A stretch of 64,000 bases of DNA, from the IMG/VR virus record IMGVR_UViG_3300023174_000033, positions 400,606-464,605 of that record, one strand, 5' to 3'. Position numbers and translations under genes: made by a program. How positions within the stretch are numbered: position 1 is the stretch's first letter; every line of letters starts with the position of its first letter. The notes beneath the pieces were generated by a model that made no database searches, had not been told where the DNA came from, and worked only from the letters and a program-made list of their open reading frames with translations. This document shows, piece by piece, positions 26,588-59,783 of this stretch.

Positions 26588-26661
26588 AGACAGGTGGCGC
26601 AATCGGTGAGCGCAGGACTCTTATACGGTCAAGGTTGTGGGTTCAAGTCCCATCCTGTCAA
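26588..26661 (+). tRNA. tRNA-Ile(UAU)
   Basis: D arm GCGC/GCGC, anticodon loop CT-TAT-AC, T arm GTGGG-TTCAAGT-CCCAT. The 1:72 pair is an A:A mismatch. No encoded CCA. Confidence 0.8.
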
Positions 26662-26718
26662 CAAATAAAATCTGTAAACAAAGAGGGCTAATAATATAAA
26701 ATATTAAGATATATAAAA

Positions 26719-26792
26719 GGGCTCTTAACTCAGTAGGTCAGAGTGTCGGTCTCATAAACCGGAAGTCGTTGGTTCAAACCCAACAGGGCCCA
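26719..26792 (+). tRNA. tRNA with CAU anticodon (Met or lysidine-type Ile2)
   Basis: Acceptor GGGCTCT/AGGGCCC, loop CT-CAT-AA, T arm GTTGG-TTCAAAC-CCAAC. No encoded CCA. Confidence 0.9.
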
Positions 26793-26825
26793 CACTTTTT
26801 TATTAAAAAAAACTAATTAACTAAC

Positions 26826-36977: not shown

Positions 36978-37877
36978 ATGAAGAAATTAAAGACTTTCGA
37001 ACAATTCAAAGAAAAAAATGTCCAAGAAGGCATAAAGGATTATTTATTAGGTGGTTTAGCCACAATAGGTAGTATGGTTACTACACCAGAAACCTCTTAT
37101 GGACAACAAAAAACCCCAAAAGAAGTTACTTCGCAACAAGTCAGTGATAAAAAGGACATACTGGGTAGACCATTAACAGCAGCACCCCCCACAAAAACTG
37201 AGAATCTTGGAAAGCGTAAGTATTTAGTAACCACTAAACAAATAAACCCAAGTCCACAAAAGGATGCTGAATTAAAAGCTAAGGGGTATAAACCAGTTTG
37301 GACTGAGACTGTAAAGTCTACACCAAAATGGGGAGTTGAGAGTTCTGAAAGAAAAAAGCCAGTTGTAATGAAATCGGATAATGATAAGTTCTTTGAACTC
37401 GGTGGATATACTTTAACACAACAAGTAAAAGATACAATACAAGCAAGGATTAATAAATTGGGTGGTGTTGATAGTGTGAAAGTTGAAGCTTCTACTGATA
37501 AAACTCCATTGACTAAGAAACTAAAAGCTGATTTAGAATCAAAAGGTTATTCGGGTGATAACACTGGACTTTCAAAAGCTAGGTCAAATGCTATTAAAAA
37601 CTTTTTGATTAGTATTGGTGTAAATCCATCAAATATCGTTGAAGTTAATTTGGCCGACCAAGGTAAAGAGGGTGGTTATGACCCAAGTGCTAGATATGTA
37701 AAACTTACTCTAATTGAAAAAGGTAGTGGTACTGGTAGTGGTGAAGAATATTTCCAAGAAAAGGAAGAAATAGTTGTTTACTATCAAAGAGTAAATGATA
37801 TGATGCAGAAAATGGTCAAACAAAGATATGGTACACCTATCGATTGTGAAGGTGGTAACTGTGCCACTTATGATTGA
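36978..37877 (+). CDS. OmpA-like peptidoglycan-binding-domain protein with N-terminal tag
   Basis: FFELGGYTL...VKVEASTD...NTGLSKARSNAIKNFL...ARYV. Starts MKKLKTFEQF. Confidence 0.75.
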   Translation: MKKLKTFEQFKEKNVQEGIKDYLLGGLATIGSMVTTPETSYGQQKTPKEVTSQQVSDKKDILGRPLTAAPPTKTENLGKRKYLVTTKQINPSPQKDAELKAKGYKPVWTETVKSTPKWGVESSERKKPVVMKSDNDKFFELGGYTLTQQVKDTIQARINKLGGVDSVKVEASTDKTPLTKKLKADLESKGYSGDNTGLSKARSNAIKNFLISIGVNPSNIVEVNLADQGKEGGYDPSARYVKLTLIEKGSGTGSGEEYFQEKEEIVVYYQRVNDMMQKMVKQRYGTPIDCEGGNCATYD

Positions 37878-37928: not shown

Positions 37929-38903
37929 TTAAGGAGCGGCAAAAGTAGTTCTTCCACCACCAGTAGCAAACGTAGCTAACATTCTTGATTTCTGACCAGC
38001 AGAGAACATATACATACAAGCATCATCAGTATAATCCATATAGTTCATAGTCATTTCAATAGGTGTTCCAGTACAAGTGGATCTATGACCAGCAGCTGGA
38101 CAACCATAGTTTGCAGTATTATGAGTTGGAGTATCTGTAACTAGATCAGAACCACAAGTTGCATCTCCCCAAATGTGACGAAGGTTTAACCAGTGTCCAA
38201 CTTCATGTGTAGCGGTTCTGCCTTTGTTGAATGGAGCTGCGGCAGTTCCAGTTCTTCCAAATGCAGTGTTTAAGATAACAACACCATCAGTCGCAGAAGA
38301 ACCACCTGGGAATTGAGCATATCCTAAGATACCATTTCCAAGAGTACAAGCCCATAAATTAAGATAGATAGTTGGTGAAGTTGGGTTTAATCCACCAGAA
38401 GCAGTTTTCTTAACAGCATCATTTGTAGACCAAGAAGTCTTTGTTGTGGCCTTACGAGTTACACCTTGTAAAACAAAACGGATATTAGTGGCACCAGCTT
38501 TAACACCTGTAAAAGTAGAAGGGACTAAAGATACATCAGTATTTGTGCCACCAAAATCTTCATTTAAAACATCAATTTGTGATTGGATTTGAGTTTGTGA
38601 AATGTTTTCAGCAGTTGTTCTATACAATACATTAACCCAAACAGGAATTTCATAAACACCGTTTACTAACCTACCCATTCTCATAAGGTTTTGATTGGTC
38701 TCAAGGTTTCTTTCAATTTCATCCATTCTTGATTGAAGCTGAGGGTCTTCTTGGAGTTTCTGTTGTAAAACTTCCATAGAAGCACATTGTCTACCAGCAA
38801 ATTGTGGTTCAGATGTCTTGATAGAAGAAATATCCTCTGACTTTTGACAAGCGGTAAATCCTAGTATGGCTAGAACAAAACCGAATAATTTTAGTTTTTT
38901 CAT
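37929..38903 (-). CDS. M43 (pappalysin-like) zinc metalloprotease lipoprotein
   Basis: Lipobox GFTA|C, RQCAS switch-like Cys, HEVGHWLNLRH zinc motif, NYMDY Met-turn. Confidence 0.9.
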   Translation of the reverse strand: MKKLKLFGFVLAILGFTACQKSEDISSIKTSEPQFAGRQCASMEVLQQKLQEDPQLQSRMDEIERNLETNQNLMRMGRLVNGVYEIPVWVNVLYRTTAENISQTQIQSQIDVLNEDFGGTNTDVSLVPSTFTGVKAGATNIRFVLQGVTRKATTKTSWSTNDAVKKTASGGLNPTSPTIYLNLWACTLGNGILGYAQFPGGSSATDGVVILNTAFGRTGTAAAPFNKGRTATHEVGHWLNLRHIWGDATCGSDLVTDTPTHNTANYGCPAAGHRSTCTGTPIEMTMNYMDYTDDACMYMFSAGQKSRMLATFATGGGRTTFAAP

Positions 38904-39184: not shown

Positions 39185-39437
39185 TGTCTATTATACCCTC
39201 AATAATTTTATTTCTCTTATTTTGAAACTCTATTTGTTTATATTCTTCTTCAAAAAATATTCTATTAGCTAACTCAACAATTTGGTCATGAGCTTGGTCT
39301 GGACTTATCATACCACCCCATCTTTTTCTTTTTATCTGTTCACTATCAATTGATGTTAATATAGATATAGCTGCTAGTAGTAACTTACCCTCGTCTATAT
39401 TAGTGTCAATTTGTCTAAATTCTTCTACCTTTATCAT
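39177..39437 (-). CDS. Hypothetical protein with C-terminal tag
   Basis: Ends KRNKIIEGII. Confidence 0.75.
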   Translation of the reverse strand: MIKVEEFRQIDTNIDEGKLLLAAISILTSIDSEQIKRKRWGGMISPDQAHDQIVELANRIFFEEEYKQIEFQNKRNKIIEGIIDNV

Positions 39438-39441
39438 ACAT

Positions 39442-39476
39442 AAAAAAACCCCACACTTTGGGTGTGGGGTTTTTAT
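39442..39476. terminator. Intrinsic terminator
   Basis: AAAAAACCCCACAC-TTTGG-GTGTGGGGTTTTT. Confidence 0.85.
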
Positions 39477-39490
39477 TAAAAAAATCTCAA

Positions 39491-41083
39491 TTAGTTTTTA
39501 ATAAACTTAACTGTTTCTTTAGTACTGTTTGATGTGAGGGTAAGGAAATAAACACCATTAGCAAGATTGTTAATAGAAACTTCTTGTGTAGGAGTGTCAT
39601 AAAGTTCCCCATCCATAGAACCTTCGGTCATTAATTTACCTTGGGAATTTCTAATAGAATAGTTATATACACCCTCCTCAGCGATAGTAGCAATAAATTC
39701 AATTTTATCACTTACAATGTTTCCATTTACAATTTCAAGTGGGAACATTTCCTCAGGTACACCACCGTCCATGAAAGTTGATTCACCTTCAACGATTGCT
39801 CTACGAACATTAACAGATCCCTCACAAGAAAATCCGATAGGAGTTGAACCTGGAGGAGGTGGAGGAAGTTGAGAAATAATGATGTTGTCCATATCATATC
39901 CATCTGCACCACTACCGAAATCAGCAGGGTTTGAAGCATCTTGGAATTTTATGAAATTAACGATTGAGAACTCAGGTCCGAAAGAAGATAGGTCAATAGC
40001 AGCTGATGTTCCAGCGATGCCAAGAGCATCTTTACAGATAAGTACAGTACTAGACCAATTTACACCATCAGCAGACACACTTACGTTTGCTTTCTCAGGG
40101 TAACTTGGACAAGGTTGGTTGTTCCAAGTTGTTTCAAAAGAAAAGAATTCAGCACCAGGACCATTAAAAACGGTATAAGGAAGTTGTAGACAAGCCCAAC
40201 CACCGAATCCAAGTGACCAGAAGTTGTAAGAACCACTAGCTGGTCCAGAATCACGAAGACCTGGGTTAGATAAAGCAGCTGATGGGAATCCAATTTCATT
40301 GATATTAGCGTTAGCGAAATTCTTACGAACACCAACAATACCACGGCCAGGGAAATTACCAGCAGCTCCAACAAATTGTGAAGCAACTCCTTGTTGATAT
40401 TCACAAATTGGTGAGGTTGGGGTATTGCCAGCAGTAGGCATTTCATAATTCACTGTGATACCATCAACATCATAACCATCAACACCATCACCTTGAACAT
40501 TCCAAGCTGGATTTGTTCTATCAGTAATACGTACATATTGAGCTTTCATAAGAGGGAAAATATCAAAAGAACCATTGTAACAAGTATTGTAAGCACCACC
40601 TGGTCCCAAAGTAATTGTACCAGGAGTAATCCAATTAACACCATCTTCGGAAACTTCTACAAGAGCTTGTTCTGAATTTGTTGGACGACACGTAGGATTT
40701 CCCCAAGTAGTTTCGTGGATAGTGATGTCATTACCAACTCCATTAGAAATCCATTCAGATGAACGAAGTACCATTTCACCACCGAATCCAAGAGATACGA
40801 AGTTCATAGCACCAGTGATATCAGATTGTTCAGCCACTAAAGCTTTACTCGGAATAGAACGAGCACCTACGGGATAACCCAAAGTATTACCAGGATTTCC
40901 AGCACCTGGACTCAGCACCCGTGAAGATTTTGCGGTGTTTCCGGATCTGAGTGAACTAGCAACGTGACCACGGGCAGGTCCTTGCTTCACACACATAACT
41001 TCCCAAGTCATAGCTTGAGAATTCTGAAGGGTTGTGAAAATTCCACCAACCACAGCAGTTAACATTAGAAAAAGGTTTTTCAT
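39491..41083 (-). CDS. Secreted protein with two SLGFGG repeat domains and a T9SS type A C-terminal domain
   Basis: Likely start MKNLFLML (41083). Two copies of SLGFGG...ETTW...E.A.VSVS.DG.NW. Ends INNLANGVYFLTL...ETVKFIKN. Confidence 0.85.
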   Translation of the reverse strand: MKNLFLMLTAVVGGIFTTLQNSQAMTWEVMCVKQGPARGHVASSLRSGNTAKSSRVLSPGAGNPGNTLGYPVGARSIPSKALVAEQSDITGAMNFVSLGFGGEMVLRSSEWISNGVGNDITIHETTWGNPTCRPTNSEQALVEVSEDGVNWITPGTITLGPGGAYNTCYNGSFDIFPLMKAQYVRITDRTNPAWNVQGDGVDGYDVDGITVNYEMPTAGNTPTSPICEYQQGVASQFVGAAGNFPGRGIVGVRKNFANANINEIGFPSAALSNPGLRDSGPASGSYNFWSLGFGGWACLQLPYTVFNGPGAEFFSFETTWNNQPCPSYPEKANVSVSADGVNWSSTVLICKDALGIAGTSAAIDLSSFGPEFSIVNFIKFQDASNPADFGSGADGYDMDNIIISQLPPPPPGSTPIGFSCEGSVNVRRAIVEGESTFMDGGVPEEMFPLEIVNGNIVSDKIEFIATIAEEGVYNYSIRNSQGKLMTEGSMDGELYDTPTQEVSINNLANGVYFLTLTSNSTKETVKFIKN

Positions 41084-41117
41084 AAAATTTTTATAGTTTT
41101 TTCTTTTATATATCATG

Positions 41118-41153
41118 AAAAATGGGTGAAGTTTAAGATTTCACCCATTTTTT
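41118..41153. terminator. Intrinsic terminator
   Basis: AAAATGGGTGAA-N7-TTTCACCCATTTT. Confidence 0.75.
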
Positions 41154-41182
41154 CTTTGTACTTTTCCAAGATCCTTAAAAAA

Positions 41183-41350
41183 CTAACTGGTTTTTTTATC
41201 TTTCTCCTCTAAATATTTAAGAGCTTCTTTATATCCTTTTACGAATCCGGTAATTTCCGCTGATCTATGTCCGGTAAAAAATGTTTCGTTAAAAGGGTTG
41301 TAGGGTATTAACTTTTCAGCTAATTCTCTAATTTCTTGATCAGATTTCAT
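41183..41350 (-). CDS. Small hypothetical protein (55 aa)
   Basis: MKSDQEIRELAEKL..., follows 41354..41737 directly. Confidence 0.55.
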   Translation of the reverse strand: MKSDQEIRELAEKLIPYNPFNETFFTGHRSAEITGFVKGYKEALKYLEEKDKKTS

Positions 41351-41353
41351 AAC

Positions 41354-41737
41354 TTATTTATTAAATAAATCGTTTAATTTTCTATCTCTTATTTCTTGTT
41401 TGAAAAATTGAAATTGATAATCCATATATTGACAATTAAAATTGTAATCAGTTGGGACTGTTTCATAAGGTTGGTGACGAGTTCCGAATTTACCACTTAA
41501 TTCAAAATGTATCCCACCTGCAACATAAATATTGACTTTCATTATGTATCTTTCCGAACCTCTGAAAGTTATTGTATGTGCTCCTAATTCTGGTACTAAT
41601 ATCACACAGGTGTCTAAATTCCAAATTTGTGGTAATTCTTTTTTAACTTTGAACCCAATAGACACAAGGAAATCTCTAGCTTCTTTTACTTTTTCGAAAC
41701 CTTCGTAGTTTTCCTCTATGTAAATGTTTTCATCCAT
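41354..41737 (-). CDS. Hypothetical protein with C-terminal tag
   Basis: Ends EIRDRKLNDLF. Confidence 0.75.
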   Translation of the reverse strand: MDENIYIEENYEGFEKVKEARDFLVSIGFKVKKELPQIWNLDTCVILVPELGAHTITFRGSERYIMKVNIYVAGGIHFELSGKFGTRHQPYETVPTDYNFNCQYMDYQFQFFKQEIRDRKLNDLFNK

Positions 41738-41739
41738 AA

Positions 41740-41772
41740 TAAAAAAAACCCTCCTTTTTAGGGAGGGCTTTG
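41740..41772. terminator. Intrinsic terminator
   Basis: AAAACCCTCC-TTTTTAG-GGAGGGCTTT. Confidence 0.75.
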
Positions 41773-41775
41773 ACT

Positions 41776-43089
41776 TTACTTAACAAAATTTGTAACTACC
41801 ACTTTGTCACCACTCCTAACCATCGCCCGATAAACTCCACTTGGTTTAGTTCGGATTTTATCAAGGTCTTGATTCACATTATTATTATTTGTTTTAATAA
41901 CAAGTTGTCCAAATGAATTGTAAATATAAACTTCTCCGGCAAAATTACTTGGAAAGTTTGTTCTTAAAGTTCCATTTTGATAGTAGAAATAAGAACGAAC
42001 ATCATTTAGTTTTTTAGCTGACAAAATTCCAGGAATTACAATAGTGCAAATTGAATCAGCTCCCAAGTTGTAATTGTCGGAAGTCTTTTTCAATTTGAGA
42101 TAAAATTTCTCATAACCTTCAGATTGATCGTCGTTATTAATCGTAATTCCGAAACTAGTAGTTGTGGTTCCAATCGGAAAAGTCGCAAGTGCCGGTTGTT
42201 GTAAGATAAAATCAGCAGAATCAGTGTCTACATTCTGTACAGAAATCAAACAAGCAATCTGTTGATTTACTGGTACCGTAGAATTTAGTGGCATACTGAG
42301 AACAGTACCTTCCTCAATAACATAATTCGTATCAGCAAAACTGATTACAGGAATTTCAAGGGGGGCGGATGGTGTGATATCAGCAGAAGACCTTGGGAGA
42401 AGTTGGTACCTTGAATCTCTTGGAATAGAGGAATCAAACTGACCACCCATACCTACAACATCAACTTTACCAGTTGGAACAGGTGCTCCGAAAAGGTCAC
42501 AATCATTATCAATACGAACATCAAACTCTTGATAATCAGTTGTGCCAGCAACTCCTCTGAAAGCTTTAGCGGTAAATCCAGAACCACTTGGCACAGCTGG
42601 CCAGCTATTTGGTAGAAATTCTAAATTCTGCATTTTAACCAAGTAGGATTCAGAAACCTCACTCAAATCGGTAACGACTCTTGGTTGTGTTAATTGACAA
42701 TTGGTTTTTAGAATTTTAATTGTATCAATTACAATTTGTGATAGTCCGTTGAAACAGTTTACCATTCCGATAACTTTAACACTATCACCTTCGTTCAAAG
42801 TAACTCCGATATCAAGTGTAGCTTTAAAAAGCCCAATTCCACATCGGTTGCTTAACAAAGTATCAGCTCGTTTCTCAACGAGACTTAGTTGGATTCGCCC
42901 GTTAGCTAATCCAAAATTCTTTCCATAAACGACTCCTTGTGTCCTAACAAACACCGAGTCATAATCCGAACAACCACCTTGGGTTGTGTCCAAACCTCTG
43001 ATTTCATCCACATTCAAACTTAGAATTTGAGGCTGTGAAAACAGAGACATACTAATTAGTAGAAAAATTGTTGTAAAAATGTATCTCAT
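41776..43089 (-). CDS. Secreted protein: OB-fold-like repeats, Calx-beta domain, T9SS type A C-terminal domain
   Basis: Signal peptide SLFS|QP. ISFADTNYVIEEG...ITINNDDQSEGYEKF (Calx-beta). Ends IYNSFGQLV...PSGVYRAMV...TNFVK. Confidence 0.85.
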   Translation of the reverse strand: MRYIFTTIFLLISMSLFSQPQILSLNVDEIRGLDTTQGGCSDYDSVFVRTQGVVYGKNFGLANGRIQLSLVEKRADTLLSNRCGIGLFKATLDIGVTLNEGDSVKVIGMVNCFNGLSQIVIDTIKILKTNCQLTQPRVVTDLSEVSESYLVKMQNLEFLPNSWPAVPSGSGFTAKAFRGVAGTTDYQEFDVRIDNDCDLFGAPVPTGKVDVVGMGGQFDSSIPRDSRYQLLPRSSADITPSAPLEIPVISFADTNYVIEEGTVLSMPLNSTVPVNQQIACLISVQNVDTDSADFILQQPALATFPIGTTTTSFGITINNDDQSEGYEKFYLKLKKTSDNYNLGADSICTIVIPGILSAKKLNDVRSYFYYQNGTLRTNFPSNFAGEVYIYNSFGQLVIKTNNNNVNQDLDKIRTKPSGVYRAMVRSGDKVVVTNFVK

Positions 43090-43215
43090 AAAATTTTATA
43101 GTTTGTTTATTTTATCCGAAAAATTAGATAAGTTTTTTTCCAAACAACAATTCATTTTTTCCCAAAAAAGTACAATTTTCGGAATTTTTGGATTTTTTAT
43201 GGAAATATATAATAT

Positions 43216-43593
43216 ATGGAGGAAAGGAATAAAATAATGATAGTTGACGAGTCGGAAACTATTTCATTAATCACTAGCAAACTATTTGAATTTCAACACT
43301 GGAATGTAACAAAAGCAATCAGTGGTGAAATGGCTCTAGAATTTATACAAAATGAAGATTTTGATGTGATTCTTATGGATATAAATCTACCAGGAATGAC
43401 TGGAATAGAGTGTTGTCATCTAATAAGAAAAATGGAAGATAAAAGAAAATCTAAAACCCCCATCTTTGCGGTTACTGGAAATGATTTAAATTTAACAGAA
43501 AAGGAATATAAAGATAGGGGATTTAGTGAATTTTTTGAAAAACCAACTAACTTTCAACTACTAATAGATAAACTTAAAAAGATTCTGGACTAA
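43216..43593 (+). CDS. Stand-alone response-regulator receiver domain
   Basis: IMIVDE, DVILMDINLPGMTG, AVTG, EKP: all receiver landmarks. AATATATA at 43204-43211. Confidence 0.9.
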   Translation: MEERNKIMIVDESETISLITSKLFEFQHWNVTKAISGEMALEFIQNEDFDVILMDINLPGMTGIECCHLIRKMEDKRKSKTPIFAVTGNDLNLTEKEYKDRGFSEFFEKPTNFQLLIDKLKKILD

Positions 43594-43600
43594 AAAATTC

Positions 43601-44005
43601 ATGTTAAATGAATTACAAAAGGCCAATCAAAATAAAATAGTAGTTAAAGAACAAGACCTACATAAACCAATAGCAAAAGGTTTATTCACTTTGGAAGGTC
43701 AAATTGAATTAGGTGCAAACAACATATTAGAACAATATAAAGTTTTAAAAAAACAAGCTCTTGCAATCCAAGAGAAAAAAAGAATTTCGACTAGGATTTA
43801 CGAAGCAGAAATCAAGTTTGAACCAATTATACTCGGCATTTATAACCTTTACAGAACCGAAACCAATACATTTATCTCAATGGTTGGGCCAACTGAATGG
43901 GGTAGGTCCATGAAAAGGAAAATTGAATTTATCGCAAAGATAAAATTAGATTATGACCACACTTGGCAGATTTTAGAATTAAACGATTCAGACTTCTTTA
44001 TCTAA
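43601..44005 (+). CDS. DUF2452-like protein
   Basis: IYEAEIKFEPI.G.Y.LY...ISMVGP.EW...LDYDHTW. Confidence 0.7.
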   Translation: MLNELQKANQNKIVVKEQDLHKPIAKGLFTLEGQIELGANNILEQYKVLKKQALAIQEKKRISTRIYEAEIKFEPIILGIYNLYRTETNTFISMVGPTEWGRSMKRKIEFIAKIKLDYDHTWQILELNDSDFFI

Positions 44006-44561
44006 ACTCAGGATTTTGCTCACTTTTTACAATGGGGACCTTGGTTTTCCTAGGTCGGAACCATAAAAATCTCCTTGAGGTGGGCATTTCTTTATATTTA
44101 GTACTGTCTTTTTCGGATTTCTCTCTTAATTTACTAACCACTTGATTCAAACTATCAATCTCTCTTTCTAATTTATTGTTATAGATTTTAAGTTCTGCGT
44201 TTTCAAAAGATTCTTGACTAGGGCCATATACCATGGGATTTGGATTTACCTCAGTAATAATCTTATCAACATATTTTATTTCAGTTTTTGGAACTATCAA
44301 AACTTTTGGTTTCTTTTTCAATTCACGAAGGATACTATCCCTAACCAATTCTGAATTATGAACTTTTATTTCCGACTGAGTGAAAATCAATTTTTTCCAT
44401 GTTTCGAGTAGGGATATTGTTGAATCCACCCTTGACTTATAATTGAATTTATGTGGTTTTGGATCATGTCCACAACCAAAGAAATAACAATAAATCAAAT
44501 ATAGCCAAATAAGAACGAATATTGAAATTGTGATATTTCTGTATTTTTCTGGAAAAATCAT
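43998..44561 (-). CDS. Membrane-anchored coiled-coil protein (possibly lysis-associated)
   Basis: N-terminal TM, C-terminal coiled coil. Confidence 0.65.
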   Translation of the reverse strand: MIFPEKYRNITISIFVLIWLYLIYCYFFGCGHDPKPHKFNYKSRVDSTISLLETWKKLIFTQSEIKVHNSELVRDSILRELKKKPKVLIVPKTEIKYVDKIITEVNPNPMVYGPSQESFENAELKIYNNKLEREIDSLNQVVSKLREKSEKDSTKYKEMPTSRRFLWFRPRKTKVPIVKSEQNPEFR

Positions 44562-44563
44562 AG

Positions 44564-44785
44564 TTATTTATTTTCTTTTTTAAACATTTGAATAATTTTA
44601 TCATTCAGTAGTTTGTTTTCATCCTTCAAAGCCTTATTCTCCTCACGGATTTCAGCTATTTGTTTTAGGAATTGATTTCTACTATCCACATATAAATATC
44701 CAATTGCTGTCAAGCAAATAAATAGCATACCAGAAATCGGATTACTCAGAAATTTGGTATAGGTATCCATTTTATTCAAAGTCAT
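44564..44785 (-). CDS. Small TM plus coiled-coil protein (holin-like candidate)
   Basis: ISGMLFICLTAIGYLYVD followed by heptads. AATATATA upstream. Confidence 0.6.
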   Translation of the reverse strand: MTLNKMDTYTKFLSNPISGMLFICLTAIGYLYVDSRNQFLKQIAEIREENKALKDENKLLNDKIIQMFKKENK

Positions 44786-44828
44786 AACAATAGATATAGA
44801 TTTATATCTATATATTATGTTTTGAAGT

Positions 44829-47369: not shown

Positions 47370-48110
47370 ATGGACCCGTTTAGTGAGTCATTTGGTTTTG
47401 GTGAATATAAATCACAAGCAATAGATTTATTAAAAACTACCATCGAAATTTTAAATGAATTCGAAATACCAAACATGCTAATATCCGGCACTTTACTTGG
47501 ATATATCAGACACAATGATTTTATACCTTGGGATGATGACATAGACTTACTTGTTGATTCTTCAATCCTAAGAAAACTAGGTAAGATTGCTGAAAAATAT
47601 GATAACATTAATATTTTTTACAAAAATAAATATGATGCTATTAAATTCTGTTTTGATTTTGGAAAACCCATAAGTGATAAATCTTGGGAAATGTCAATAA
47701 TAGATGGTAAAATTCAAAGAAAATCAAAACTTAATTTTCCATTTGTAGATTTATTTATCTATGAATCTGGTTACGGGACTCATATTTGTGGACAAGAACA
47801 ACATATCGAAATTGATGGTGAAATTAGAAAAATGTTTATGCCCTTTTCTGGTCCTTGTGATAGGTGTTTTAGATTCATAAAATCGGATGAATTAGTTTTT
47901 TTTCACAACGATTGGAAGAAAAAGAACTTTTTCCCTCTACAAGAAGTAGATTTTTTAGGAATAAAATGTAATATACCTAAAAATCCCCACCATTTTTTAA
48001 AAAAAAATTACGATGGGGATTATATGAAAGTAATTGAGTCAAGAAACTACGACCATAAAAACAACTTAAAAGTAGAAAATATAACTAAAAAACCTTATGT
48101 TAGAAATTGA
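47370..48110 (+). CDS. licD: LicD-family (fukutin-like) phosphotransferase
   Basis: ISGTLLGYIRHNDFIPWDDDIDL, VDLF, NIPKNP..FL...Y. Confidence 0.85.
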   Translation: MDPFSESFGFGEYKSQAIDLLKTTIEILNEFEIPNMLISGTLLGYIRHNDFIPWDDDIDLLVDSSILRKLGKIAEKYDNINIFYKNKYDAIKFCFDFGKPISDKSWEMSIIDGKIQRKSKLNFPFVDLFIYESGYGTHICGQEQHIEIDGEIRKMFMPFSGPCDRCFRFIKSDELVFFHNDWKKKNFFPLQEVDFLGIKCNIPKNPHHFLKKNYDGDYMKVIESRNYDHKNNLKVENITKKPYVRN

Positions 48111-49869
48111 AGAATTAAAAACACATTTGCCGACTGGTGTAGATGCAAAGATTATGCAGTATGAGGAAAATGCTACAAACATCTCCGATGATAAAATTGA
48201 TTTTCCTAAATTATTGGATGGCACACAAACTACCATACTCATAAATATGGAAAGACATACTGAGAGATATCATGTAAGTTTGGAACAATTAAAAAAACTA
48301 TCAATACAAAATTTTGTACACCTTAAAGGAACTGATGGTAAAATTAAATCTCAGTTGGAACAGGATCTAACTTACATCTTGGGGTTTATCAAACAATTCA
48401 ATGATAAGGTAGTTAGTAATCAAATAGAAATAAATGATTTCTCAGAAGTAAATAATCAAGGTGTAAATCTACAAGATGGACCACTTGGCTGTTATTGTTC
48501 ACATCTTAGAGCAATGATTTATGGTTACTTATCTGGTAGTGATTACACTATAATTTGTGAAGATGATATTTCTATTACAAACACAAAAAATATTGAGGAG
48601 TATATACCAAAAATTCCAAATGATTGGGATGTTATTTTCTTGAACTCAAGACCCAAAAATGTTTTACATGACGAACCTTATTATAAATTCATTGATGAAT
48701 TCCATTCTGGTCACTTTTATATTATCAAAAACAAAGCTCTACCTACCATATTTAGTGGTATGTACCCGATGAACGACCAAGTAGATGTTCTACTTTCTTT
48801 CTTACACAAGAAATTGAATATGTATAACATACCAGATACTGTTTATCAAAAGAACTTAGAAACCAATACCCAAAACAATCTTGATATTATTTTTAGTTCA
48901 CCTAACTATATTCCAGTAACAGATGCTTTAAACAAATCAGAAGAAATATTAAATCACTATGCTAATAAAATTCTTCCTGATAACACAGACCAAAATAGAT
49001 TGATTGTAAAGCATTTGATGTATGATATGATTTACAATTTTATACTAACTAAAGGCATTAATAACGAACCAGATCCCAACATAGAAGACTATGTTTTTGA
49101 TAATCCCCATATTGGAAAATGGAGATATACTAAGTTGGAAAAATTTGTTGGATTTTTCTTACAATGTACGAAAAAAGGAATTAACCCAAAGTTAGCTGGT
49201 CAAGGTTTAACAAATGCACTGTTATTTACTTTAAATAAGTTCACTGAATTACATGATACTGATGGAGATATTAAAGCTTATGGATTTGGATCGACTGCTC
49301 ATACCTACAAAGTTGGTAATGATTTGTTAATCAAAAGATATAATAAAAAATTGAGGTGGGCTACTGAAGGTCATGATGACCCCAAAAAAATTATGAATAA
49401 GGAAATAGAACTTTTGGAAAAATTAAAAAATGTAAAATCGGTTCCGAAAATAGTTGACTATGACAATAGAGATATCATTATGGAATATAGGGGGGAATCT
49501 ATCTATAATGATTTTAACTTACCTACTGATTGGAAGGATCAAATAACAAATATATTTTCTGAACTTACTAATAATGGTGTATTTTATCCAGAGTTTAGGT
49601 TGCAGAATATCCTTGTATTAGATGGTAAGATTAGTTTTGTTGATTTTGGTATGGCTGAGTTTAGGGATAAATGTGATAACGCTATCAATCTCGAAAAGTT
49701 TATTAAGTATTTGAGTTTACTTGAGGATAAGTTTAAGATTGTAATTGATTTAGATGCTAGACAAAGGTTGATTTCAACTTTTCTAAAAAATGTTAATATG
49801 CCAACGCCGACCATAGACCAGAAGTTTTCGGAAGGTATTGAACCATTGTTTGGTAATGACTTTTTTTAG
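48097..49869 (+). CDS. GT25 glycosyltransferase fused to a C-terminal kinase-like domain
   Basis: LINMERHTER, GCYCSH, ICEDD. Then GFGSTAH, LIKRY, IIMEYRG, YPEFRLQN, FVDFG. Confidence 0.8.
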   Translation: MLEIEELKTHLPTGVDAKIMQYEENATNISDDKIDFPKLLDGTQTTILINMERHTERYHVSLEQLKKLSIQNFVHLKGTDGKIKSQLEQDLTYILGFIKQFNDKVVSNQIEINDFSEVNNQGVNLQDGPLGCYCSHLRAMIYGYLSGSDYTIICEDDISITNTKNIEEYIPKIPNDWDVIFLNSRPKNVLHDEPYYKFIDEFHSGHFYIIKNKALPTIFSGMYPMNDQVDVLLSFLHKKLNMYNIPDTVYQKNLETNTQNNLDIIFSSPNYIPVTDALNKSEEILNHYANKILPDNTDQNRLIVKHLMYDMIYNFILTKGINNEPDPNIEDYVFDNPHIGKWRYTKLEKFVGFFLQCTKKGINPKLAGQGLTNALLFTLNKFTELHDTDGDIKAYGFGSTAHTYKVGNDLLIKRYNKKLRWATEGHDDPKKIMNKEIELLEKLKNVKSVPKIVDYDNRDIIMEYRGESIYNDFNLPTDWKDQITNIFSELTNNGVFYPEFRLQNILVLDGKISFVDFGMAEFRDKCDNAINLEKFIKYLSLLEDKFKIVIDLDARQRLISTFLKNVNMPTPTIDQKFSEGIEPLFGNDFF

Positions 49870-52430: not shown

Positions 52431-52916
52431 TTAATTCGGTCTTTCCAAAACCTCTTCAAATTTCCATTCAATTTTCTGTACTTTCTTGAAAGCTCTTTTT
52501 GTTTCCCTTTTCAAAATCAACAAACCAAGACAACCTTTTTGTACCTCTTTGGTGGGAGGAATTTTTATTAACAAAAAATAGTTCTCACTTTTTTTGAATG
52601 GATCACACCTTAAAATACAATCACCATTCTTGACTATTTTCCTTGATAGAACTTTCCAATTTAAAGTGATGAGAGTCACATCAATAGAATCAGCAATCCC
52701 ATGAGTTTGAATCAAAAATGCCAACTTGGTTTTAAATTGAACATCGGAAATTTTAACAGTATAAGTTTTTCCACTTTCCACATCATAAACTCTCTTATCC
52801 ACAAGTGAATAAGGAATTACTTCCAAATTATCCAACTTTGTAGATAGAATATCGAAACATTGACCACAAACCAAGTTAGATATTAGAAAAAGTAAAGAAA
52901 ATAAACAAAATTTCAT
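52431..52916 (-). CDS. Putative secreted protein
   Basis: Signal peptide ending LVCG|QC. Confidence 0.75.
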   Translation of the reverse strand: MKFCLFSLLFLISNLVCGQCFDILSTKLDNLEVIPYSLVDKRVYDVESGKTYTVKISDVQFKTKLAFLIQTHGIADSIDVTLITLNWKVLSRKIVKNGDCILRCDPFKKSENYFLLIKIPPTKEVQKGCLGLLILKRETKRAFKKVQKIEWKFEEVLERPN

Positions 52917-54810: not shown

Positions 54811-56574
54811 ATGAAATTACTCGATGGAAAAAAGGCTTCTAAAATAATACTTTCTGAATTAAAATATAAAATAAAAAAAATTACTGAAAGAAATAATGAA
54901 ATAAAAATACCAAAAATTGCGATAGTTCTGGTCGGTGATAATCCTAGCAGTATGTCTTATATGAGGTCAAAACTAAAGATATCATCGGAAAATAATTTCA
55001 ATGCTCAATTGTTTTTTTATTCTGACTTTATAAAAGAAGATGAATTGCTAAACGAAATTGATAAGTTAAACAATTCATCAGATATTGATGGGGTCATAGT
55101 TGAACTACCCCTACCAAATCAAATATCCCAAGAAAAAATAATTAACCGAATTGATCCACAAAAAGATATTGATGGCTTCAATCCGATTAACTTTGGCAAA
55201 ATGTCTCTTGGCCAAAAAGCACACAGACCCGCTACAGCTTATGGTATTCTAAAACTTCTGGAATTTTACAAAATTTATACAACGAGCAAACACATTGTTG
55301 TTATTGGAAGATCAAATATAGTTGGAAAACCTATATCTATAATGTTAGGAAATGACTTTGATATTGGTAGAGCGACAGTAACTTCATGTGATATAAACAC
55401 ACCAATTGAACTATTAAGAGAAGAATCAAGAAGAGCTGATATTATAATCGTAGCAGTTGGTAAAGTAAATCTTTTAAAAGAAGATATGGTAAAGGATGGT
55501 GCCATAGTTATTGACGTTGGCATAAATATGGTTGGTGATACAATCGTAGGAGATTGTGATTTTGAAAACGTATCTCCGAAATGTGAATGGATCACACCTG
55601 TTCCAGGTGGTGTTGGCCCAATGACAATTTGTGCACTTCTTTTGAACACATTTGCAACTTGGTATGAAAAAAATAAAATACTTGAAGAAAAGATAAATTC
55701 AATTGACTACACAGTTAAACTGATTGAGAGTCTAGACCAAAGTTTCTCACCCACCACGGATGGAAAAAAACTAATCGGAACCTACGATCATAATAGAATT
55801 CCAGGTGATAATGAAGTAATTCATGTCATAGGTGATTATCCAGTCGGAAAGCATTCACTAATAACAGAAAATCCAAGTTTCAGACATTATAAATGGGCAA
55901 TGAAGTTCAGCTATGATTCATTTGAGGGTAATACCTGTTGGGATGGAATTGATGATATTTGGATCATCAACGATACCGTTAGACAAGATAGACTTTATGA
56001 TACCCTGAAAGAATTCAAGAAAATTGGGATACCGCTCAATAAAGTAAAAATACAACCAGCCGAATTCAATAGTTCAACCGGTAATAATTACGCAAATAAA
56101 CTAATTGGATGTTTCAAATCACACCTTAAAATATTTGAACAATATCAAGATAAAGATTTTAAACATTTATTAATTTTTGAAGATGATTTTACTTTTTCCG
56201 ATCCGATTGAAGAGTCACAAAGACAAATTAGAGAATTTGTCTCAAGAGACTATGAATATGATGTGATGTTATTCTCAACAAGTTGTATCGGTCAAATAAT
56301 TCCAATTGATGATTTGATAAGTGAATCAAAACAACCTTGTACAACAACTGCTGGTTATATGGTCTCAAAGAAGGGACTTGAAAAAATTATACCACTTTGG
56401 CACGAAGGAATAAACGGTCTACTTGGATGGTGTGATTTCAATCAATTTGCTTGTGATAAATATTGGACAAAAATTCAGAAAGATGGACAAATGTTTTCTT
56501 TTAACGCAAAAATTGGATACCAAAGACCAAGCTATAGTACAACTCTTGGCAATTTGAGTTACAATTTAGATTAA
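54811..56574 (+). CDS. folD: FolD (methylene-THF dehydrogenase/cyclohydrolase) fused to a GT25 domain
   Basis: LLDGK, KDIDGF, VIGRSNIVGKP, IDVGIN, TPVPGGVGPMT in the first ~290 aa. IGCFKSH, IFEDD, TTAGYMVS, QRPSYS after. One uninterrupted frame. Confidence 0.85.
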   Translation: MKLLDGKKASKIILSELKYKIKKITERNNEIKIPKIAIVLVGDNPSSMSYMRSKLKISSENNFNAQLFFYSDFIKEDELLNEIDKLNNSSDIDGVIVELPLPNQISQEKIINRIDPQKDIDGFNPINFGKMSLGQKAHRPATAYGILKLLEFYKIYTTSKHIVVIGRSNIVGKPISIMLGNDFDIGRATVTSCDINTPIELLREESRRADIIIVAVGKVNLLKEDMVKDGAIVIDVGINMVGDTIVGDCDFENVSPKCEWITPVPGGVGPMTICALLLNTFATWYEKNKILEEKINSIDYTVKLIESLDQSFSPTTDGKKLIGTYDHNRIPGDNEVIHVIGDYPVGKHSLITENPSFRHYKWAMKFSYDSFEGNTCWDGIDDIWIINDTVRQDRLYDTLKEFKKIGIPLNKVKIQPAEFNSSTGNNYANKLIGCFKSHLKIFEQYQDKDFKHLLIFEDDFTFSDPIEESQRQIREFVSRDYEYDVMLFSTSCIGQIIPIDDLISESKQPCTTTAGYMVSKKGLEKIIPLWHEGINGLLGWCDFNQFACDKYWTKIQKDGQMFSFNAKIGYQRPSYSTTLGNLSYNLD

Positions 56575-57875: not shown

Positions 57876-58290
57876 TTAATTGTTTAAAGATACAACCCTA
57901 TACATTAGTTCCAAGTTAGAAAATTGGAAAATAACATAACTCCCGTTATCACTTGTGTGATACCAAATCATTTTACACTTTGTTCCATTTTCATCCACAC
58001 ACATTACAGAACATTACAGAATAAATAGGATTACTTTTCTCATCATATGATTTAGTAACACCTTCAATCATATCATAAGTCTGTGGTGTAGAAGAATAAA
58101 CATTAACTCTTTCATTTTGAGATACTATTAGAACTCCAGATGTAGACCACTCACTCCATAAACCCCAAGACTCACCATTATTATATGATAACCTGGATGA
58201 ATAATCAGAAGCTCTCCACTTATACACTTGTTGAGAAAAGCAAATGGTAATTGAGAAGAAAAGAAGAAGGGTTGTAATAATTTTTTTCAT
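57876..58290 (-). pseudogene. Secreted protein frameshifted by a 10-bp tandem duplication
   Basis: ACATTACAGA x2 at 58001-58020. Removing one copy gives a 134-aa ORF ending at 57876, 2 nt before the next ATG. Confidence 0.75.
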
Positions 58291-59339: not shown

Positions 59340-59783
59340 ATGAGAATAATCATCATTATATTATTTTCACTATTTCCAATTAATGCTTTTGGTCAATATT
59401 TACAAACTCTAAATACATCAAGTGAAAAAGATGATTATTCTGAATTTGAAATTAAAATATTGATGCAAATCAATTTCAAAAGAACCTTAAATAAATTAAG
59501 ACCGCTAAAAACCAATCCCACATTAAATAATTTTTCAAAATTAATCTGCAATAGATTACAAGAAAAAAATATTGACACCTCAATAAAAAATACTCTAATT
59601 ATTTATTATAGTGATTCACTAAAATTAGACCACCCAATGCTGAAAGATACTTTTCATTTAATAGGCATTCATAAAGTTCCTCATAAATTTAATTGTGAAG
59701 TTTTGGTAATAACTTTGGACAAAAAAATGGAGCAAATCAAATGGAAGGATTTAGATTGTCCTAAATTTATGAGTAAAAAATAA
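59340..59783 (+). CDS. Secreted protein, possibly degenerate CAP/SCP domain
   Basis: Signal peptide NAFG|QY. INFKRT..KL.PL...TL. Confidence 0.6.
   Translation: MRIIIIILFSLFPINAFGQYLQTLNTSSEKDDYSEFEIKILMQINFKRTLNKLRPLKTNPTLNNFSKLICNRLQEKNIDTSIKNTLIIYYSDSLKLDHPMLKDTFHLIGIHKVPHKFNCEVLVITLDKKMEQIKWKDLDCPKFMSKK

What the first reader, a model, noticed from the sequence alone, without database searches (positions are those of the whole stretch)
39491..43089. Phage genes encoding cargo for the host type IX secretion system
Seen: two neighbouring genes each have a signal peptide and end in a typical type A CTD (IRNSQGKLM...INNLANGVYFLTL...VKFIKN and IYNSFGQLV...PSGVYRAMV...TNFVK). Each has its own terminator, and phage-type tagged genes are interleaved (38951, 39177, 41354), arguing against a host insert or chimera. 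Established: type A CTDs route proteins through the Bacteroidetes T9SS to the surface or medium. Inference: the phage uses the host T9SS to display adhesin-like (Calx-beta, SLGFGG-repeat) proteins, remodelling the infected cell surface for exclusion, aggregation or anti-grazing.
Basis: partly seen in the sequence, partly recalled or inferred. Interest (0 to 1): 0.76.

Follow-up and report, generated by a model that had tools for sequence, protein, structure and literature searches.

The report
Huge phage carries host-derived T9SS cargo
A 465-kb freshwater phage carries two (four genome-wide) genes for proteins addressed to its Bacteroidota host's type IX secretion system; at least one was captured from the host lineage and kept under selection, a phenomenon already reported in phages but never tested at the bench.

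Summary
ORF A (window 39491-41083, minus strand, 530 aa) and ORF B (41776-43089, minus strand, 437 aa) each have a signal-peptide-like N-terminus. Each ends in a type A T9SS sorting domain (TIGR04183 30.6 and 28.6 bits, cut-off 23) and is followed by its own terminator hairpin.

The record is a real 464.6-kb phage with major capsid, portal and TerL genes. Its TerL is 64% identical to that of the 635-642 kb "Mahaphage" genomes. Independent assemblies reproduce the locus, so it is neither a chimera nor a recent insert.

A is a tandem discoidin (lectin-like) protein. Its phage copies form one well-supported clade nested among chromosomal orthologues from freshwater Cytophagales, which encode SprA and 71-150+ CTD cargo genes. 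dN/dS is about 0.15, CTD included.

B is a YhcR-type OB-fold/DUF5689 module plus Calx-beta plus CTD, with no catalytic domain.

The block B...o127-o55-A-o86-M43 protease recurs, whole or in part, in six related phage contigs.

Export through the host T9SS is well supported in silico. The proposed purposes (exclusion, aggregation, anti-grazing) are untested.

Phage-encoded T9SS cargo was already reported in "Cryophage" (2020) and in gut phage contigs (2019). This is a new member of a known kind, and of moderate interest.

The parts
39491..41083 (-). ORF A: 530-aa secreted protein made of a signal peptide, a short conserved Cys-containing N-terminal segment, two discoidin/F5-8 type C-like jelly-roll domains, a Pro-rich linker and a type A CTD
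   Evidence: ORF. Start at 41083 inferred from homologues and from the hairpin over the upstream ATG. AF2 model pLDDT 88.6, pTM 0.85. Foldseek matches neuropilin b1b2, factor V/VIII C1C2, fucolectin and CBM32 pairs.
41012..41083 (-). Signal peptide of A (residues 1-24, ...QNSQA|MTW)
   Evidence: Sequence inspection and hydropathy heuristic. AF2 gives a low-pLDDT N-terminal helix.
40439..40831 (-). Discoidin-like domain 1 of A, containing the first SLGFGG and ETTWGNP motifs (approximate bounds)
   Evidence: Pfam F5_F8_type_C 30.1 bits, cut-off 28.2. Strand pattern. Fold matches.
39869..40246 (-). Discoidin-like domain 2 of A, containing the second SLGFGG and ETTWNNQPCP motifs (approximate bounds)
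   Evidence: Internal repeat visible in the alignment. Tandem-domain fold matches.
39494..39697 (-). Type A T9SS C-terminal sorting domain of A (GVYFLTL and KFIKN motifs)
   Evidence: TIGR04183 30.6 bits and 34.1 bits. Six or seven beta strands at pLDDT above 90. Residues invariant across phage and bacterial copies. dN/dS 0.14-0.17 between phages.
39444..39474 (-). Intrinsic-terminator-like hairpin after A
   Evidence: 13-bp stem with 6 GC pairs, then a T run.
41117..41153 (-). Hairpin between the 55-aa ORF and A. It separates A transcriptionally from the upstream genes and overlaps the spurious first ATG.
41183..41737 (-). Two small phage ORFs (o55 at 41183-41350, o127 at 41354-41737) between B and A
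   Evidence: No family hits. Homologues occur only in phage-like contigs L023, L024, L009 and L025, and upstream of A in the first three. The same order is seen in the P0009 contig, by ORF size and position only.
41776..43089 (-). ORF B: 437-aa secreted protein made of a signal peptide, a YhcR-type OB-fold plus beta-sandwich (DUF5689) module, a Calx-beta domain and a type A CTD. It has no catalytic domain.
   Evidence: ORF. AF2 pLDDT 82.5. Domain evidence.
43036..43089 (-). Signal peptide of B (residues 1-18, ...SLFS|QPQ; Gln at +1)
   Evidence: Inspection and heuristic.
42355..43032 (-). N-terminal OB-fold/DUF5689 module of B (residues about 20-245)
   Evidence: DUF5689 in 25 of 50 and the tRNA_anti OB-fold in 8 of 50 family members. 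AFDB matches to the YhcR N-terminal domain and to LTD or extracellular phosphoesterase proteins, rmsd 3.2-3.3 A over about 230 residues. dN/dS 0.10-0.14.
42025..42354 (-). Calx-beta domain of B (residues about 246-355)
   Evidence: Pfam 21.9 bits, sub-threshold. Foldseek TM 0.84, rmsd 2.0 A to 3e9t. Family profile hits CALX CBD at E 3.5e-7.
41779..41973 (-). Type A T9SS sorting domain of B (GVYRAMV and TNFVK motifs), with a predicted helical insertion
   Evidence: TIGR04183 28.6 bits and 32.7 bits. Family profile hits solved CTDs 8glk_D and 8glj_D. Lower pLDDT of 68-86.
41745..41771 (-). Intrinsic-terminator-like hairpin after B
   Evidence: 10-bp stem with 5 GC pairs, then a T run.
37929..38903 (-). 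M43 (pappalysin-type) zinc metalloprotease lipoprotein. It is a conserved neighbour of A in related phages and belongs to the same envelope-directed gene cluster.
   Evidence: Pfam Peptidase_M43 53.1 bits. Lipobox ...GFTAC. Close to A in L005, L040 and the P0009 contig. 83% identical to a chromosomal gene in MAGs G001 and G002.
36978..37877 (+). OmpA-like peptidoglycan-binding protein, also part of the envelope-directed cluster
   Evidence: Pfam OmpA 25.7 bits, just sub-threshold. 78% identical to the ORF next to A in L009 and 64% to one in L025.

Best explanation
A and B are genuine genes of a 465-kb Bacteroidota-infecting huge phage. They encode non-enzymatic, binding-type surface or secreted proteins addressed to the host's type IX secretion system.

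Proposed route (inferred from established T9SS biology):
1. During infection each gene is transcribed as its own unit from phage-type upstream sequence.
2. The product crosses the inner membrane through Sec, using its signal peptide.
3. Its type A CTD is recognised by the host SprA translocon and PorV shuttle.
4. The CTD is removed by the PorU sortase. The protein is then either anchored on the outer surface or released.

Origin (shown): A is a captured copy of a conserved chromosomal T9SS cargo gene of freshwater Cytophagales. The tree is consistent with a single capture, kept under purifying selection in a whole clade of huge phages. A sits in a conserved envelope-directed block (B ... o127-o55-A-o86-M43 lipoprotein protease, with an OmpA-like gene nearby). 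B is a trimmed version of a longer bacterial cargo protein.

Most likely purpose (inferred, low certainty): these proteins let the phage control the composition of the infected cell's T9SS-displayed surface coat during a long infection. They would supplement or replace the host's own lectin-like protein A and add B. The likely consequence is altered adhesion and altered access for other phages.
For: Phage identity:
- Major capsid, portal and TerL genes are present.
- TerL is 63-64% identical to the 635-642 kb Mahaphage genomes, which are predicted to infect Bacteroidetes.
- CheckV estimates 98% completeness.

Cargo features:
- TIGR04183 passes its cut-off at the extreme C-terminus of both proteins.
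- Family profiles hit solved F. johnsoniae CTDs.
- Both have signal-peptide-like N-termini. About 30 other phage ORFs do too, many with Gln at +1 as is typical of Bacteroidota.

Not an artefact:
- Contigs from another study match at 0 mismatches and bridge the o86/A and o127/B junctions.
- L023 holds REC-DUF2452-B-o127-o55-A contiguously.
- The block recurs in L009, L024 and the P0009 contig; L005 and L040 show only the A-M43 adjacency.

Capture and retention:
- All five context-verified phage copies of A fall in one 26-row clade (SH-aLRT 100). That clade is nested in a 55-row clade (99) with chromosomal Cytophagaceae copies.
- Bacterial copies sit at a syntenic LptFG-DapD locus with Bacteroidetes-type promoter motifs. 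The phage copies lack those motifs.
- dN/dS between phage copies of A is 0.12-0.17 in the body and 0.14-0.17 in the CTD.

Host competence: five MAGs carrying the A orthologue all encode SprA and 71-150+ CTD proteins.

Binding, not catalysis: tandem discoidin fold in A. OB/DUF5689 plus Calx-beta with no enzyme domain in B.
Against: - No experimental evidence of expression, export or T9SS dependence exists.
- Metatranscriptome support is weak: one 183-nt contig in B, almost nothing on A, and DNA carry-over is not excluded.
- Pfam PF18962 is below its gathering score for both proteins.
- B's CTD is poorly constrained (dN/dS 0.28-0.64) and carries a predicted helical insertion at modest pLDDT.
- The host is inferred only from gene similarity.
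- The signal peptides were judged by a heuristic.
- Only 5 of the 26 sequences in the "phage clade" have verified phage context.
- The biological purpose is undetermined.
Confidence: 0.65

Rival explanations
1. Surface remodelling specifically for superinfection exclusion or protection of progeny. The phage floods the T9SS and the surface with its own cargo (A, B) and an M43 lipoprotein protease. This masks, displaces or degrades T9SS-displayed host proteins that serve as phage receptors. It is a special case of the best explanation and is the reader's first suggestion.
For: - The envelope-directed genes are clustered and co-conserved (OmpA-like, M43 lipoprotein, A, B).
- Al-Shayeb et al. propose that huge-phage surface proteins affect susceptibility to other phages.
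- The segment that holds B, together with the REC, DUF2452 and o187 genes, is only 61-85% identical in nucleotides between two phages whose A segments are 96-99% identical. Cryophage's T9SS cargo genes are similarly variable.
- From my own knowledge: loss of T9SS or gliding gives phage resistance in Flavobacterium, so T9SS cargo are plausible receptors.
Against: - A is strongly conserved and host-like (dN/dS about 0.15), with no sign of an arms race.
- The divergence of B between the two phages is allelic replacement (dS 1.0-1.3, N-terminal module dN/dS 0.10), not accelerated protein evolution.
- No known exclusion-protein family matches.
- There is no cultured phage-host pair to test it.
Confidence: 0.25
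2. Auxiliary-gene model. The phage copies perform the same job as the host proteins, such as glycan or particle binding or nutrient capture. They keep that job running after host transcription is shut down, as cyanophage psbA does for photosynthesis.
For: - A keeps 60-64% identity to chromosomal orthologues along its full length, with the same domain order and invariant residues.
- Purifying selection is equal in body and CTD.
- The phage carries many metabolic genes, including ThyA, FolD, glycosyltransferases and an epimerase.
Against: - The function of the host protein is itself unknown.
- B is a truncated derivative (437 vs about 655-660 aa) that lacks the second N-module of the bacterial forms. 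It is therefore not a like-for-like replacement.
Confidence: 0.3
3. Neutral passengers or an assembly chimera. On this view the genes are recently acquired or mis-assembled host DNA with no role in the phage.
For: - GC of the 38-44 kb segment is slightly higher (0.34-0.36) than the phage backbone (about 0.30).
- The genes have bacterial homologues.
Against: - Independent assemblies and runs reproduce the junctions.
- Synteny holds across phages with only 60-74% A identity.
- The phage copies are monophyletic.
- dN/dS is far below 1.
- The upstream regions are phage-type.
- Host orthologue contigs have GC of 0.35-0.44 (0.44 in the nearest, G001/G002).
Confidence: 0.03
4. The CTD-like beta-sandwiches are Ig-like decoration or adhesion domains of virion proteins, so A and B are structural and not secreted.
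For: - Phages commonly carry Ig-like and carbohydrate-binding domains on virions; BACON repeats in crAss-like phages are discussed in PMC6949934.
- The genome encodes collagen-like fibres.
Against: - Both proteins have cleavable-looking signal peptides, conserved across the families.
- The neighbourhood is non-structural: REC, DUF2452, glycosyltransferases and small ORFs.
- The orthologues of A are ordinary chromosomal T9SS cargo.
Confidence: 0.05

Closest known systems
T9SS-CTD cargo genes of "Cryophage" (Bellas et al. 2020, Nat Commun, PMC7468147)
   Same: These are phage-borne genes ending in T9SS type A sorting domains, interpreted as hijacking the host T9SS. The cargo genes lie in variable regions. 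Here, B lies in a segment that was swapped between near-identical phages.
   Different: - Cryophage cargo are an endoglucanase, a GH39 and a PA14 protein. Here the cargo are non-catalytic binding proteins.
- The present phage is a 465-kb Mahaphage-related genome with four CTD genes.
- A is shown to be a single capture of a conserved host gene, retained across a phage clade.
- The Cryophage paper called its case "unique"; this finding and one search show it is recurrent.
T9SS sorting-domain ORFs near crAss-BACON ORFs in gut phage contigs (de Jonge et al. 2019, Viruses, PMC6949934)
   Same: Carbohydrate-binding-type domains are combined with a T9SS sorting domain in phages of Bacteroidetes.
   Different: Those are gut phages with BACON repeats located beside head and tail genes, possibly structural. 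No signal-peptide or origin analysis was done. There is no sequence relationship to A or B.
Chromosomal orthologues of A in freshwater Cytophagales MAGs (CAMDMI01, CANETC01, Catalimonadaceae bins)
   Same: They share the same architecture (signal peptide, two discoidin-like domains, CTD) at 50-64% identity, with invariant motifs including the CTD.
   Different: The bacterial copies sit at a fixed LptFG-DapD locus with Bacteroidetes promoter motifs. The phage copies sit behind o127-o55 with AT-rich phage upstream sequence.
ExeM/NucH/YhcR-type extracellular nucleases and LTD proteins
   Same: B's N-terminal two-domain module matches the YhcR N-terminal OB-fold/DUF5689 module found in these proteins.
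   Different: B has no nuclease, phosphoesterase or LTD domain. Only the accessory binding module plus Calx-beta is present.
Phage-encoded outer-membrane exclusion lipoproteins (T5 Llp, phi80/N15 Cor); cited from my own knowledge
   Same: In concept, these are phage proteins exported to the host envelope during infection that change receptor availability.
   Different: There is no homology. Those are small lipoproteins using the Lol pathway, whereas A and B use a CTD/T9SS address. This is a functional analogy only, and it is untested.

Membership tests
T9SS type A CTD cargo (TIGR04183 / PF18962) | HMM match above the curated cut-off | tested here: met
   TIGR04183: A 30.6 bits and B 28.6 bits against a cut-off of 23; 34.1 and 32.7 bits in the genome search. 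Caveat: Pfam PF18962 scores 26.5 and 18.2 against a gathering score of 27.
T9SS type A CTD cargo (TIGR04183 / PF18962) | Domain located at the extreme C-terminus | tested here: met
   The matches end at residues 541 of 541 and 437 of 437.
T9SS type A CTD cargo (TIGR04183 / PF18962) | N-terminal Sec signal peptide | tested here: met
   A basic n-region, an uncharged hydrophobic core and a small-residue cleavage site are present in both proteins and in their homologues. This rests on a heuristic and inspection only; no dedicated predictor was available.
T9SS type A CTD cargo (TIGR04183 / PF18962) | Compact Ig-like beta-sandwich fold with GxY and C-terminal Lys motifs | tested here: met
   A: six or seven strands across residues 460-529 at pLDDT above 90, with GVYFLTL and KFIKN. 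B: strands plus one inserted helix at pLDDT 68-86, with GVYRAMV and TNFVK. Profiles hit solved CTDs 8glj_D and 8glk_D. B is weaker than A.
T9SS type A CTD cargo (TIGR04183 / PF18962) | Producer cell possesses a T9SS | tested here: inconclusive
   The host is not identified directly. All five MAGs carrying the A orthologue encode SprA and 71-150+ CTD proteins. The nearest TerL relatives are predicted Bacteroidetes phages.
T9SS type A CTD cargo (TIGR04183 / PF18962) | Secretion depends on the T9SS, with the CTD cleaved by PorU | not testable with these tools
   This needs expression in wild-type and T9SS-mutant strains.
F5/8 type C (discoidin) / galactose-binding-like domains (protein A) | HMM match and jelly-roll fold | tested here: met
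   PF00754 30.1 bits against a cut-off of 28.2 for domain 1. Tandem-domain Foldseek matches to neuropilin b1b2, FV/FVIII C1C2, fucolectin and CBM32 pairs at probability 0.97-1.0. The ligand is unknown.
Calx-beta domain (protein B) | HMM match and fold | tested here: met
   Pfam is sub-threshold for the window protein (21.9 vs 27), but 37 of 50 family members match. The profile hits CALX CBD at E 3.5e-7. Fold TM 0.84, rmsd 2.0 A.
ExeM/NucH/YhcR extracellular nucleases (protein B) | Catalytic nuclease or phosphoesterase domain | tested here: not met
   Only the N-terminal OB-fold/DUF5689 accessory module is present. No catalytic family matches in Pfam or NCBIfam. B is therefore not a member; it shares only the accessory module.
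Phage-encoded T9SS cargo (as in Cryophage) | CTD-bearing gene embedded in a bona fide phage genome | tested here: met
   Major capsid, portal and TerL genes lie on the same 464.6-kb record. Phage-only neighbours are conserved. Independent assemblies support the locus.

The most novel reading that the evidence does not exclude
Bacteroidota-infecting huge phages of the Mahaphage-related group have domesticated a set of host envelope genes as a heritable "surface-reprogramming module". The set comprises T9SS CTD cargo, an M43 lipoprotein protease and an OmpA-like protein.

On this reading, use of the host T9SS is a recurrent, selected trait of the group. CTD ORFs are present in 4 of the 4 largest known phage genomes. 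The module would determine superinfection immunity or the adhesion behaviour of infected cells in lakes.
Probability: 0.3. Interest if true: 0.7.

Novelty: new member of a known kind. Interest (0 to 1): 0.5.

Why it matters
If the export is real, a phage can post its own proteins onto the surface of Bacteroidota through a secretion system that also builds the gliding machinery and displays much of the cell's surface coat. That would change how infected cells stick, feed and are recognised by other phages or grazers.

This case adds three things:
- The trait is not a one-off. It occurs in a huge-phage lineage and in the 634-735 kb record-holding genomes.
- One cargo gene was captured from the host once and kept under selection.
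- There is a concrete, cloneable gene pair (plus a host link through an 83%-identical protease) with which the idea could be tested in Flavobacterium johnsoniae for the first time.

Tried and rejected
- Megablast of 10 kb around the locus against GenBank phages found nothing. tblastn of A and B against the same 50,697 phages also found nothing. The families are absent from deposited phage genomes.
- Pfam Terminase_6C found nothing in the genome, but PHROGs identified TerL, portal and major capsid.
- Single-protein scans of IMG/VR found only the 246-kb relative for A and nothing for B.
- I looked for a phage histidine-kinase partner for the REC gene. The only HATPase_c hit lies in a 612-aa ORF whose N-terminus reads like a GyrB/topoisomerase II subunit (my reading of the sequence, not tested).
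- The 17-nt motif AACTATAAAA(A)TTTTATG occurs only at the starts of A and B in the 464-kb genome. It is not conserved in front of B in the closest relative, so I do not claim a shared regulatory element.
- The metatranscriptome run gave only short, divergent contigs, too weak to claim transcription.
- I considered and rejected the chimera, neutral-passenger and virion-protein readings; see the rival explanations.
- An ESM Atlas feature search of A gave only leads: DUF4465+CTD clusters and a 50-member viral Por_Secre_tail cluster.

Full report
**What is there.**
The window is the last 64 kb of a 464,605-bp IMG/VR virus record that CheckV rates 98% complete.

The record is a real phage:
- PHROGs identify a major head protein, a portal and a large terminase elsewhere on the contig.
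- The window itself holds a collagen-like tail fibre, ThyA, FolD and two tRNAs.
- TerL is 63-64% identical to the 635- and 642-kb genomes, and 40-42% identical to the 636- and 735-kb genomes, of Al-Shayeb et al. 2020. Those genomes belong to the "Mahaphage" clade and are predicted to replicate in Bacteroidetes.
- The next relatives are jumbo phages of Tenacibaculum.

The contig begins and ends inside the same collagen-like GXY repeat. The assembly therefore probably broke in a repeat of a circular or permuted genome. This also explains the GC rise at the window's end.

**The observation.**
ORF A (39491-41116 as listed, minus strand) and ORF B (41776-43089, minus strand) exist.
- TIGR04183 matches the extreme C-terminus of both above the curated cut-off: 30.6 and 28.6 bits against 23.
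- In a six-frame genome search the scores are 34.1 and 32.7 bits. No hit passes the cut-off in 14 control genomes.
- Pfam's PF18962 is marginally below threshold for A and clearly below for B.
- Against that, 38 of 50 B-family members match PF18962.
- The B-family profile hits the solved Flavobacterium johnsoniae CTDs 8glk_D and 8glj_D at E 2e-7 and 3e-6. The A-family profile hits 8glj_D at E 0.004.

Both N-termini look like cleavable signal peptides by inspection and a hydropathy heuristic.

Terminator-like hairpins follow each stop codon. A third hairpin at 41117-41153 overlaps the first ATG of A. Together with the homologues' starts, this moves the true start of A to 41083 and makes it 530 aa.

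**What the proteins are.**
The AlphaFold2 model of A is confident (pLDDT 88.6, pTM 0.85). It consists of a short conserved N-terminal segment, two jelly-roll domains each carrying an SLGFGG...ETTW...C...D-YD-DG motif set, a proline-rich linker and a beta-sandwich CTD.

Foldseek matches the pair of jelly rolls to tandem discoidin domains: neuropilin b1b2, factor V/VIII C1C2, a fucolectin and CBM32 pairs. Pfam F5_F8_type_C passes threshold for the first domain. A is thus a lectin-like binding protein with no enzyme domain.

B (pLDDT 82.5) has three parts:
- A central Calx-beta domain, with TM 0.84 and rmsd 2.0 A to CALX CBD1.
- An N-terminal two-domain module that corresponds to DUF5689 and the OB-fold of YhcR-type extracellular nucleases and LTD proteins.
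- The CTD.

B has no catalytic domain.

**Not a chimera or recent insert.**
- Contigs from a different study (runs X2, X3) match at zero mismatches and bridge the o86/terminator/A and o127/B junctions.
- An independent ENA assembly (L023) holds REC-DUF2452-B-o127-o55-A contiguously.
- The small ORFs between and beside the two genes have homologues only in phage-like contigs, never in the bacterial loci.
- The order B ... o127-o55-A-o86-M43 recurs, whole or in part, in contigs whose A is only 60-74% identical.

The locus, or near relatives of it, occurs in lake and freshwater metagenomes from at least nine studies.

**Origin.**
A has about 300 homologues.

Context look-ups show that copies at 60-97% identity (97, 74, 72, 60%; L023, P0011, P0010, P0051) lie in phage-like contigs. 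These include a 246-kb IMG/VR genome.

Copies at 45-64% identity lie in bacterial chromosomes at a syntenic START-LptFG-GT-DapD locus.

The GTDB scan names the bacteria as freshwater Cytophagales MAGs: Cytophagaceae, "Spirosoma fluviale", and Catalimonadaceae from Lake Mendota and Czech reservoirs.

In a maximum-likelihood tree, all five context-verified phage copies fall in one 26-row clade (SH-aLRT 100). That clade is nested in a 55-row clade (99) containing chromosomal Cytophagaceae copies. This is consistent with a single capture followed by diversification with the phages. The caveat is that 21 of the 26 rows have no verified context.

Between phage copies, dN/dS is 0.12-0.17 for the body and 0.14-0.17 for the CTD. 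The address tag is therefore maintained in phages as strongly as the rest of the protein.

Bacterial copies carry Bacteroidetes-type TTTG promoter elements upstream. Phage copies do not.

The neighbouring M43 lipoprotein protease is 83% identical over its full length to a chromosomal gene in two MAGs (G001, G002). In those MAGs it lies about 2 kb from their A orthologue. This is the strongest pointer to the host lineage.

All five MAGs encode the SprA translocon and 71 to over 150 CTD proteins.

B-like bacterial proteins are 42-44% identical and longer (about 655-660 aa), with a duplicated N-module. The phage B is a trimmed derivative. Its family at 45% identity or above was phage-like in all four contigs checked.

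**Mosaicism.**
Between the window and L023, the A segment is 96-99% identical in nucleotides. The segment holding B, REC and DUF2452 is only 61-85% identical.

In B, dS is 1.0-1.3 with low dN/dS in the N-module. This indicates an allelic swap rather than accelerated protein evolution. It parallels the variability of T9SS cargo genes in Cryophage.

**How it most likely works.**
Shown: phage-borne, host-derived, selectively maintained genes with a Sec signal and a T9SS type A address, in a phage whose likely hosts have the T9SS.

Inferred from established T9SS biology: export by Sec, recognition by SprA/PorV, CTD removal by PorU, then surface anchoring or release.

Speculative: the purpose. The genes sit in a conserved envelope-directed cluster (OmpA-like, M43 lipoprotein, A, B). 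The genome encodes about 30 signal-peptide or lipoprotein ORFs, many with Gln at +1 as is typical of Bacteroidota.

I therefore favour control of the infected cell's surface coat during a long infection. That could mean topping up or replacing the host's own protein A (auxiliary-gene logic), or changing receptor access for other phages (exclusion logic). Al-Shayeb et al. proposed the latter in general terms for huge-phage surface proteins. The sequence data do not decide between the two.

**Comparison with what is known.**
Phage-encoded T9SS cargo has been reported twice:
- Three variable genes in "Cryophage", called a "unique occurrence" (PMC7468147).
- Sorting-domain ORFs in gut phage contigs carrying crAss-BACON repeats (PMC6949934).

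Neither report was tested experimentally.

A and B have no homologues in 50,697 GenBank phage records. However, TIGR04183 ORFs above cut-off occur in all four of the 634-735 kb GenBank phage genomes (one to two each), and in none in Tenacibaculum phage PTm1. The ESM Atlas also holds a 50-member viral Por_Secre_tail cluster.

The present genome has four CTD ORFs in total.

**Verdict.**
The finding is real and well supported as far as computation can go. It is a new member of a known, still unvalidated kind.

It adds a clean evolutionary case (capture once, keep under selection) and evidence that the trait is recurrent among the largest phages. Interest is moderate, at 0.5.

Noticed in passing
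window 1-2223 (-), continuing upstream to G000:397786: A third and much larger T9SS cargo gene: a 1680-aa ORF with a hydrophobic N-terminus and the best CTD in the genome (TIGR04183 45.7 bits; PF18962 35.2 bits). It has no other Pfam domain. Its N-terminal part lies in the window and explains the GC of 0.39 at 1-2000.
   Followed up: partly
window 10464-10976 (-): A 170-aa ORF with a signal-peptide-like N-terminus (...SIYSQ) and a weak internal CTD-like match that ends about 14 residues before the C-terminus. TIGR04183 scores 24.8 bits in the genome search; Pfam scores 20.0, which is sub-threshold.
   Followed up: partly
window 37929-38903 (-): The M43 zinc-metalloprotease lipoprotein is 83% identical over its full length to a chromosomal gene of two Cytophagaceae MAGs. 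In those MAGs it lies about 2 kb from the host orthologue of A. It is the best host clue, and possibly a second capture from the same host region.
   Followed up: partly
window 43216-44005 (+): A stand-alone receiver-domain response regulator (75 bits) followed by a DUF2452 protein, conserved next to B in L023. No histidine kinase is evident in this phage: the only HATPase_c hit is in a 612-aa ORF that reads like a GyrB/topoisomerase subunit (not tested). A related phage contig (L025) carries two PAS/TPR histidine kinases plus a REC gene.
   Followed up: partly
window 62163-64000 and G000:1-200: The record starts and ends inside the same collagen-like GXY repeat. The genome is probably circular or permuted and the assembler broke in the repeat. 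IMG/VR lists it as linear.
   Followed up: partly
whole genome; in the window for example 8467-8976, 52431-52916, 57991-58290, 59340-59783: About 30 ORFs with signal-peptide or lipoprotein N-termini, many cleaving before Gln (...FSQ...FGQ...YGQ). This is the Bacteroidota +1 Gln habit. They include a reprolysin-like protease (G000:387080-389089) and a YDG-domain protein (G000:3374-5719). The set amounts to a sizeable phage "secretome".
   Followed up: partly
window 41083-41100 and 43089-43105 (-): The motif AACTATAAAA(A)TTTTATG occurs only twice in the 464-kb genome, exactly at the start codons of A and B. It is not conserved before B in the closest relative.
   Followed up: yes
window 39336-44822 compared with L023: There is a sharp mosaic boundary near the 3' end of B. 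The A side is 96-99% identical in nucleotides and the B/REC/DUF2452 side only 61-85%.
   Followed up: yes
GenBank LR756502.1, LR745206.1, LR756504.1, LR756501.1: All four of the 634-735 kb huge phage genomes carry one or two ORFs each with a TIGR04183 sorting domain above cut-off. Tenacibaculum phage PTm1 has none. T9SS is not mentioned in the main text of the paper that reported them.
   Followed up: partly
window 26588-26793 (+): tRNA-Ile(TAT) and tRNA-Met(CAT) genes lie side by side.
   Followed up: no
window 54811-56574 (+) and 48097-49869 (+): A FolD-like methylenetetrahydrofolate dehydrogenase/cyclohydrolase is fused to a glycosyltransferase-like C-terminal part. A second 590-aa glycosyltransferase-like protein is also present (Glyco_transf_25 in the L023 orthologue).
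   Followed up: no
L010 8001-11379 (bacterial contig): One bacterial genome carries two tandem paralogues of A (539 and 520 aa). They fall in different subclades of the tree.
   Followed up: partly
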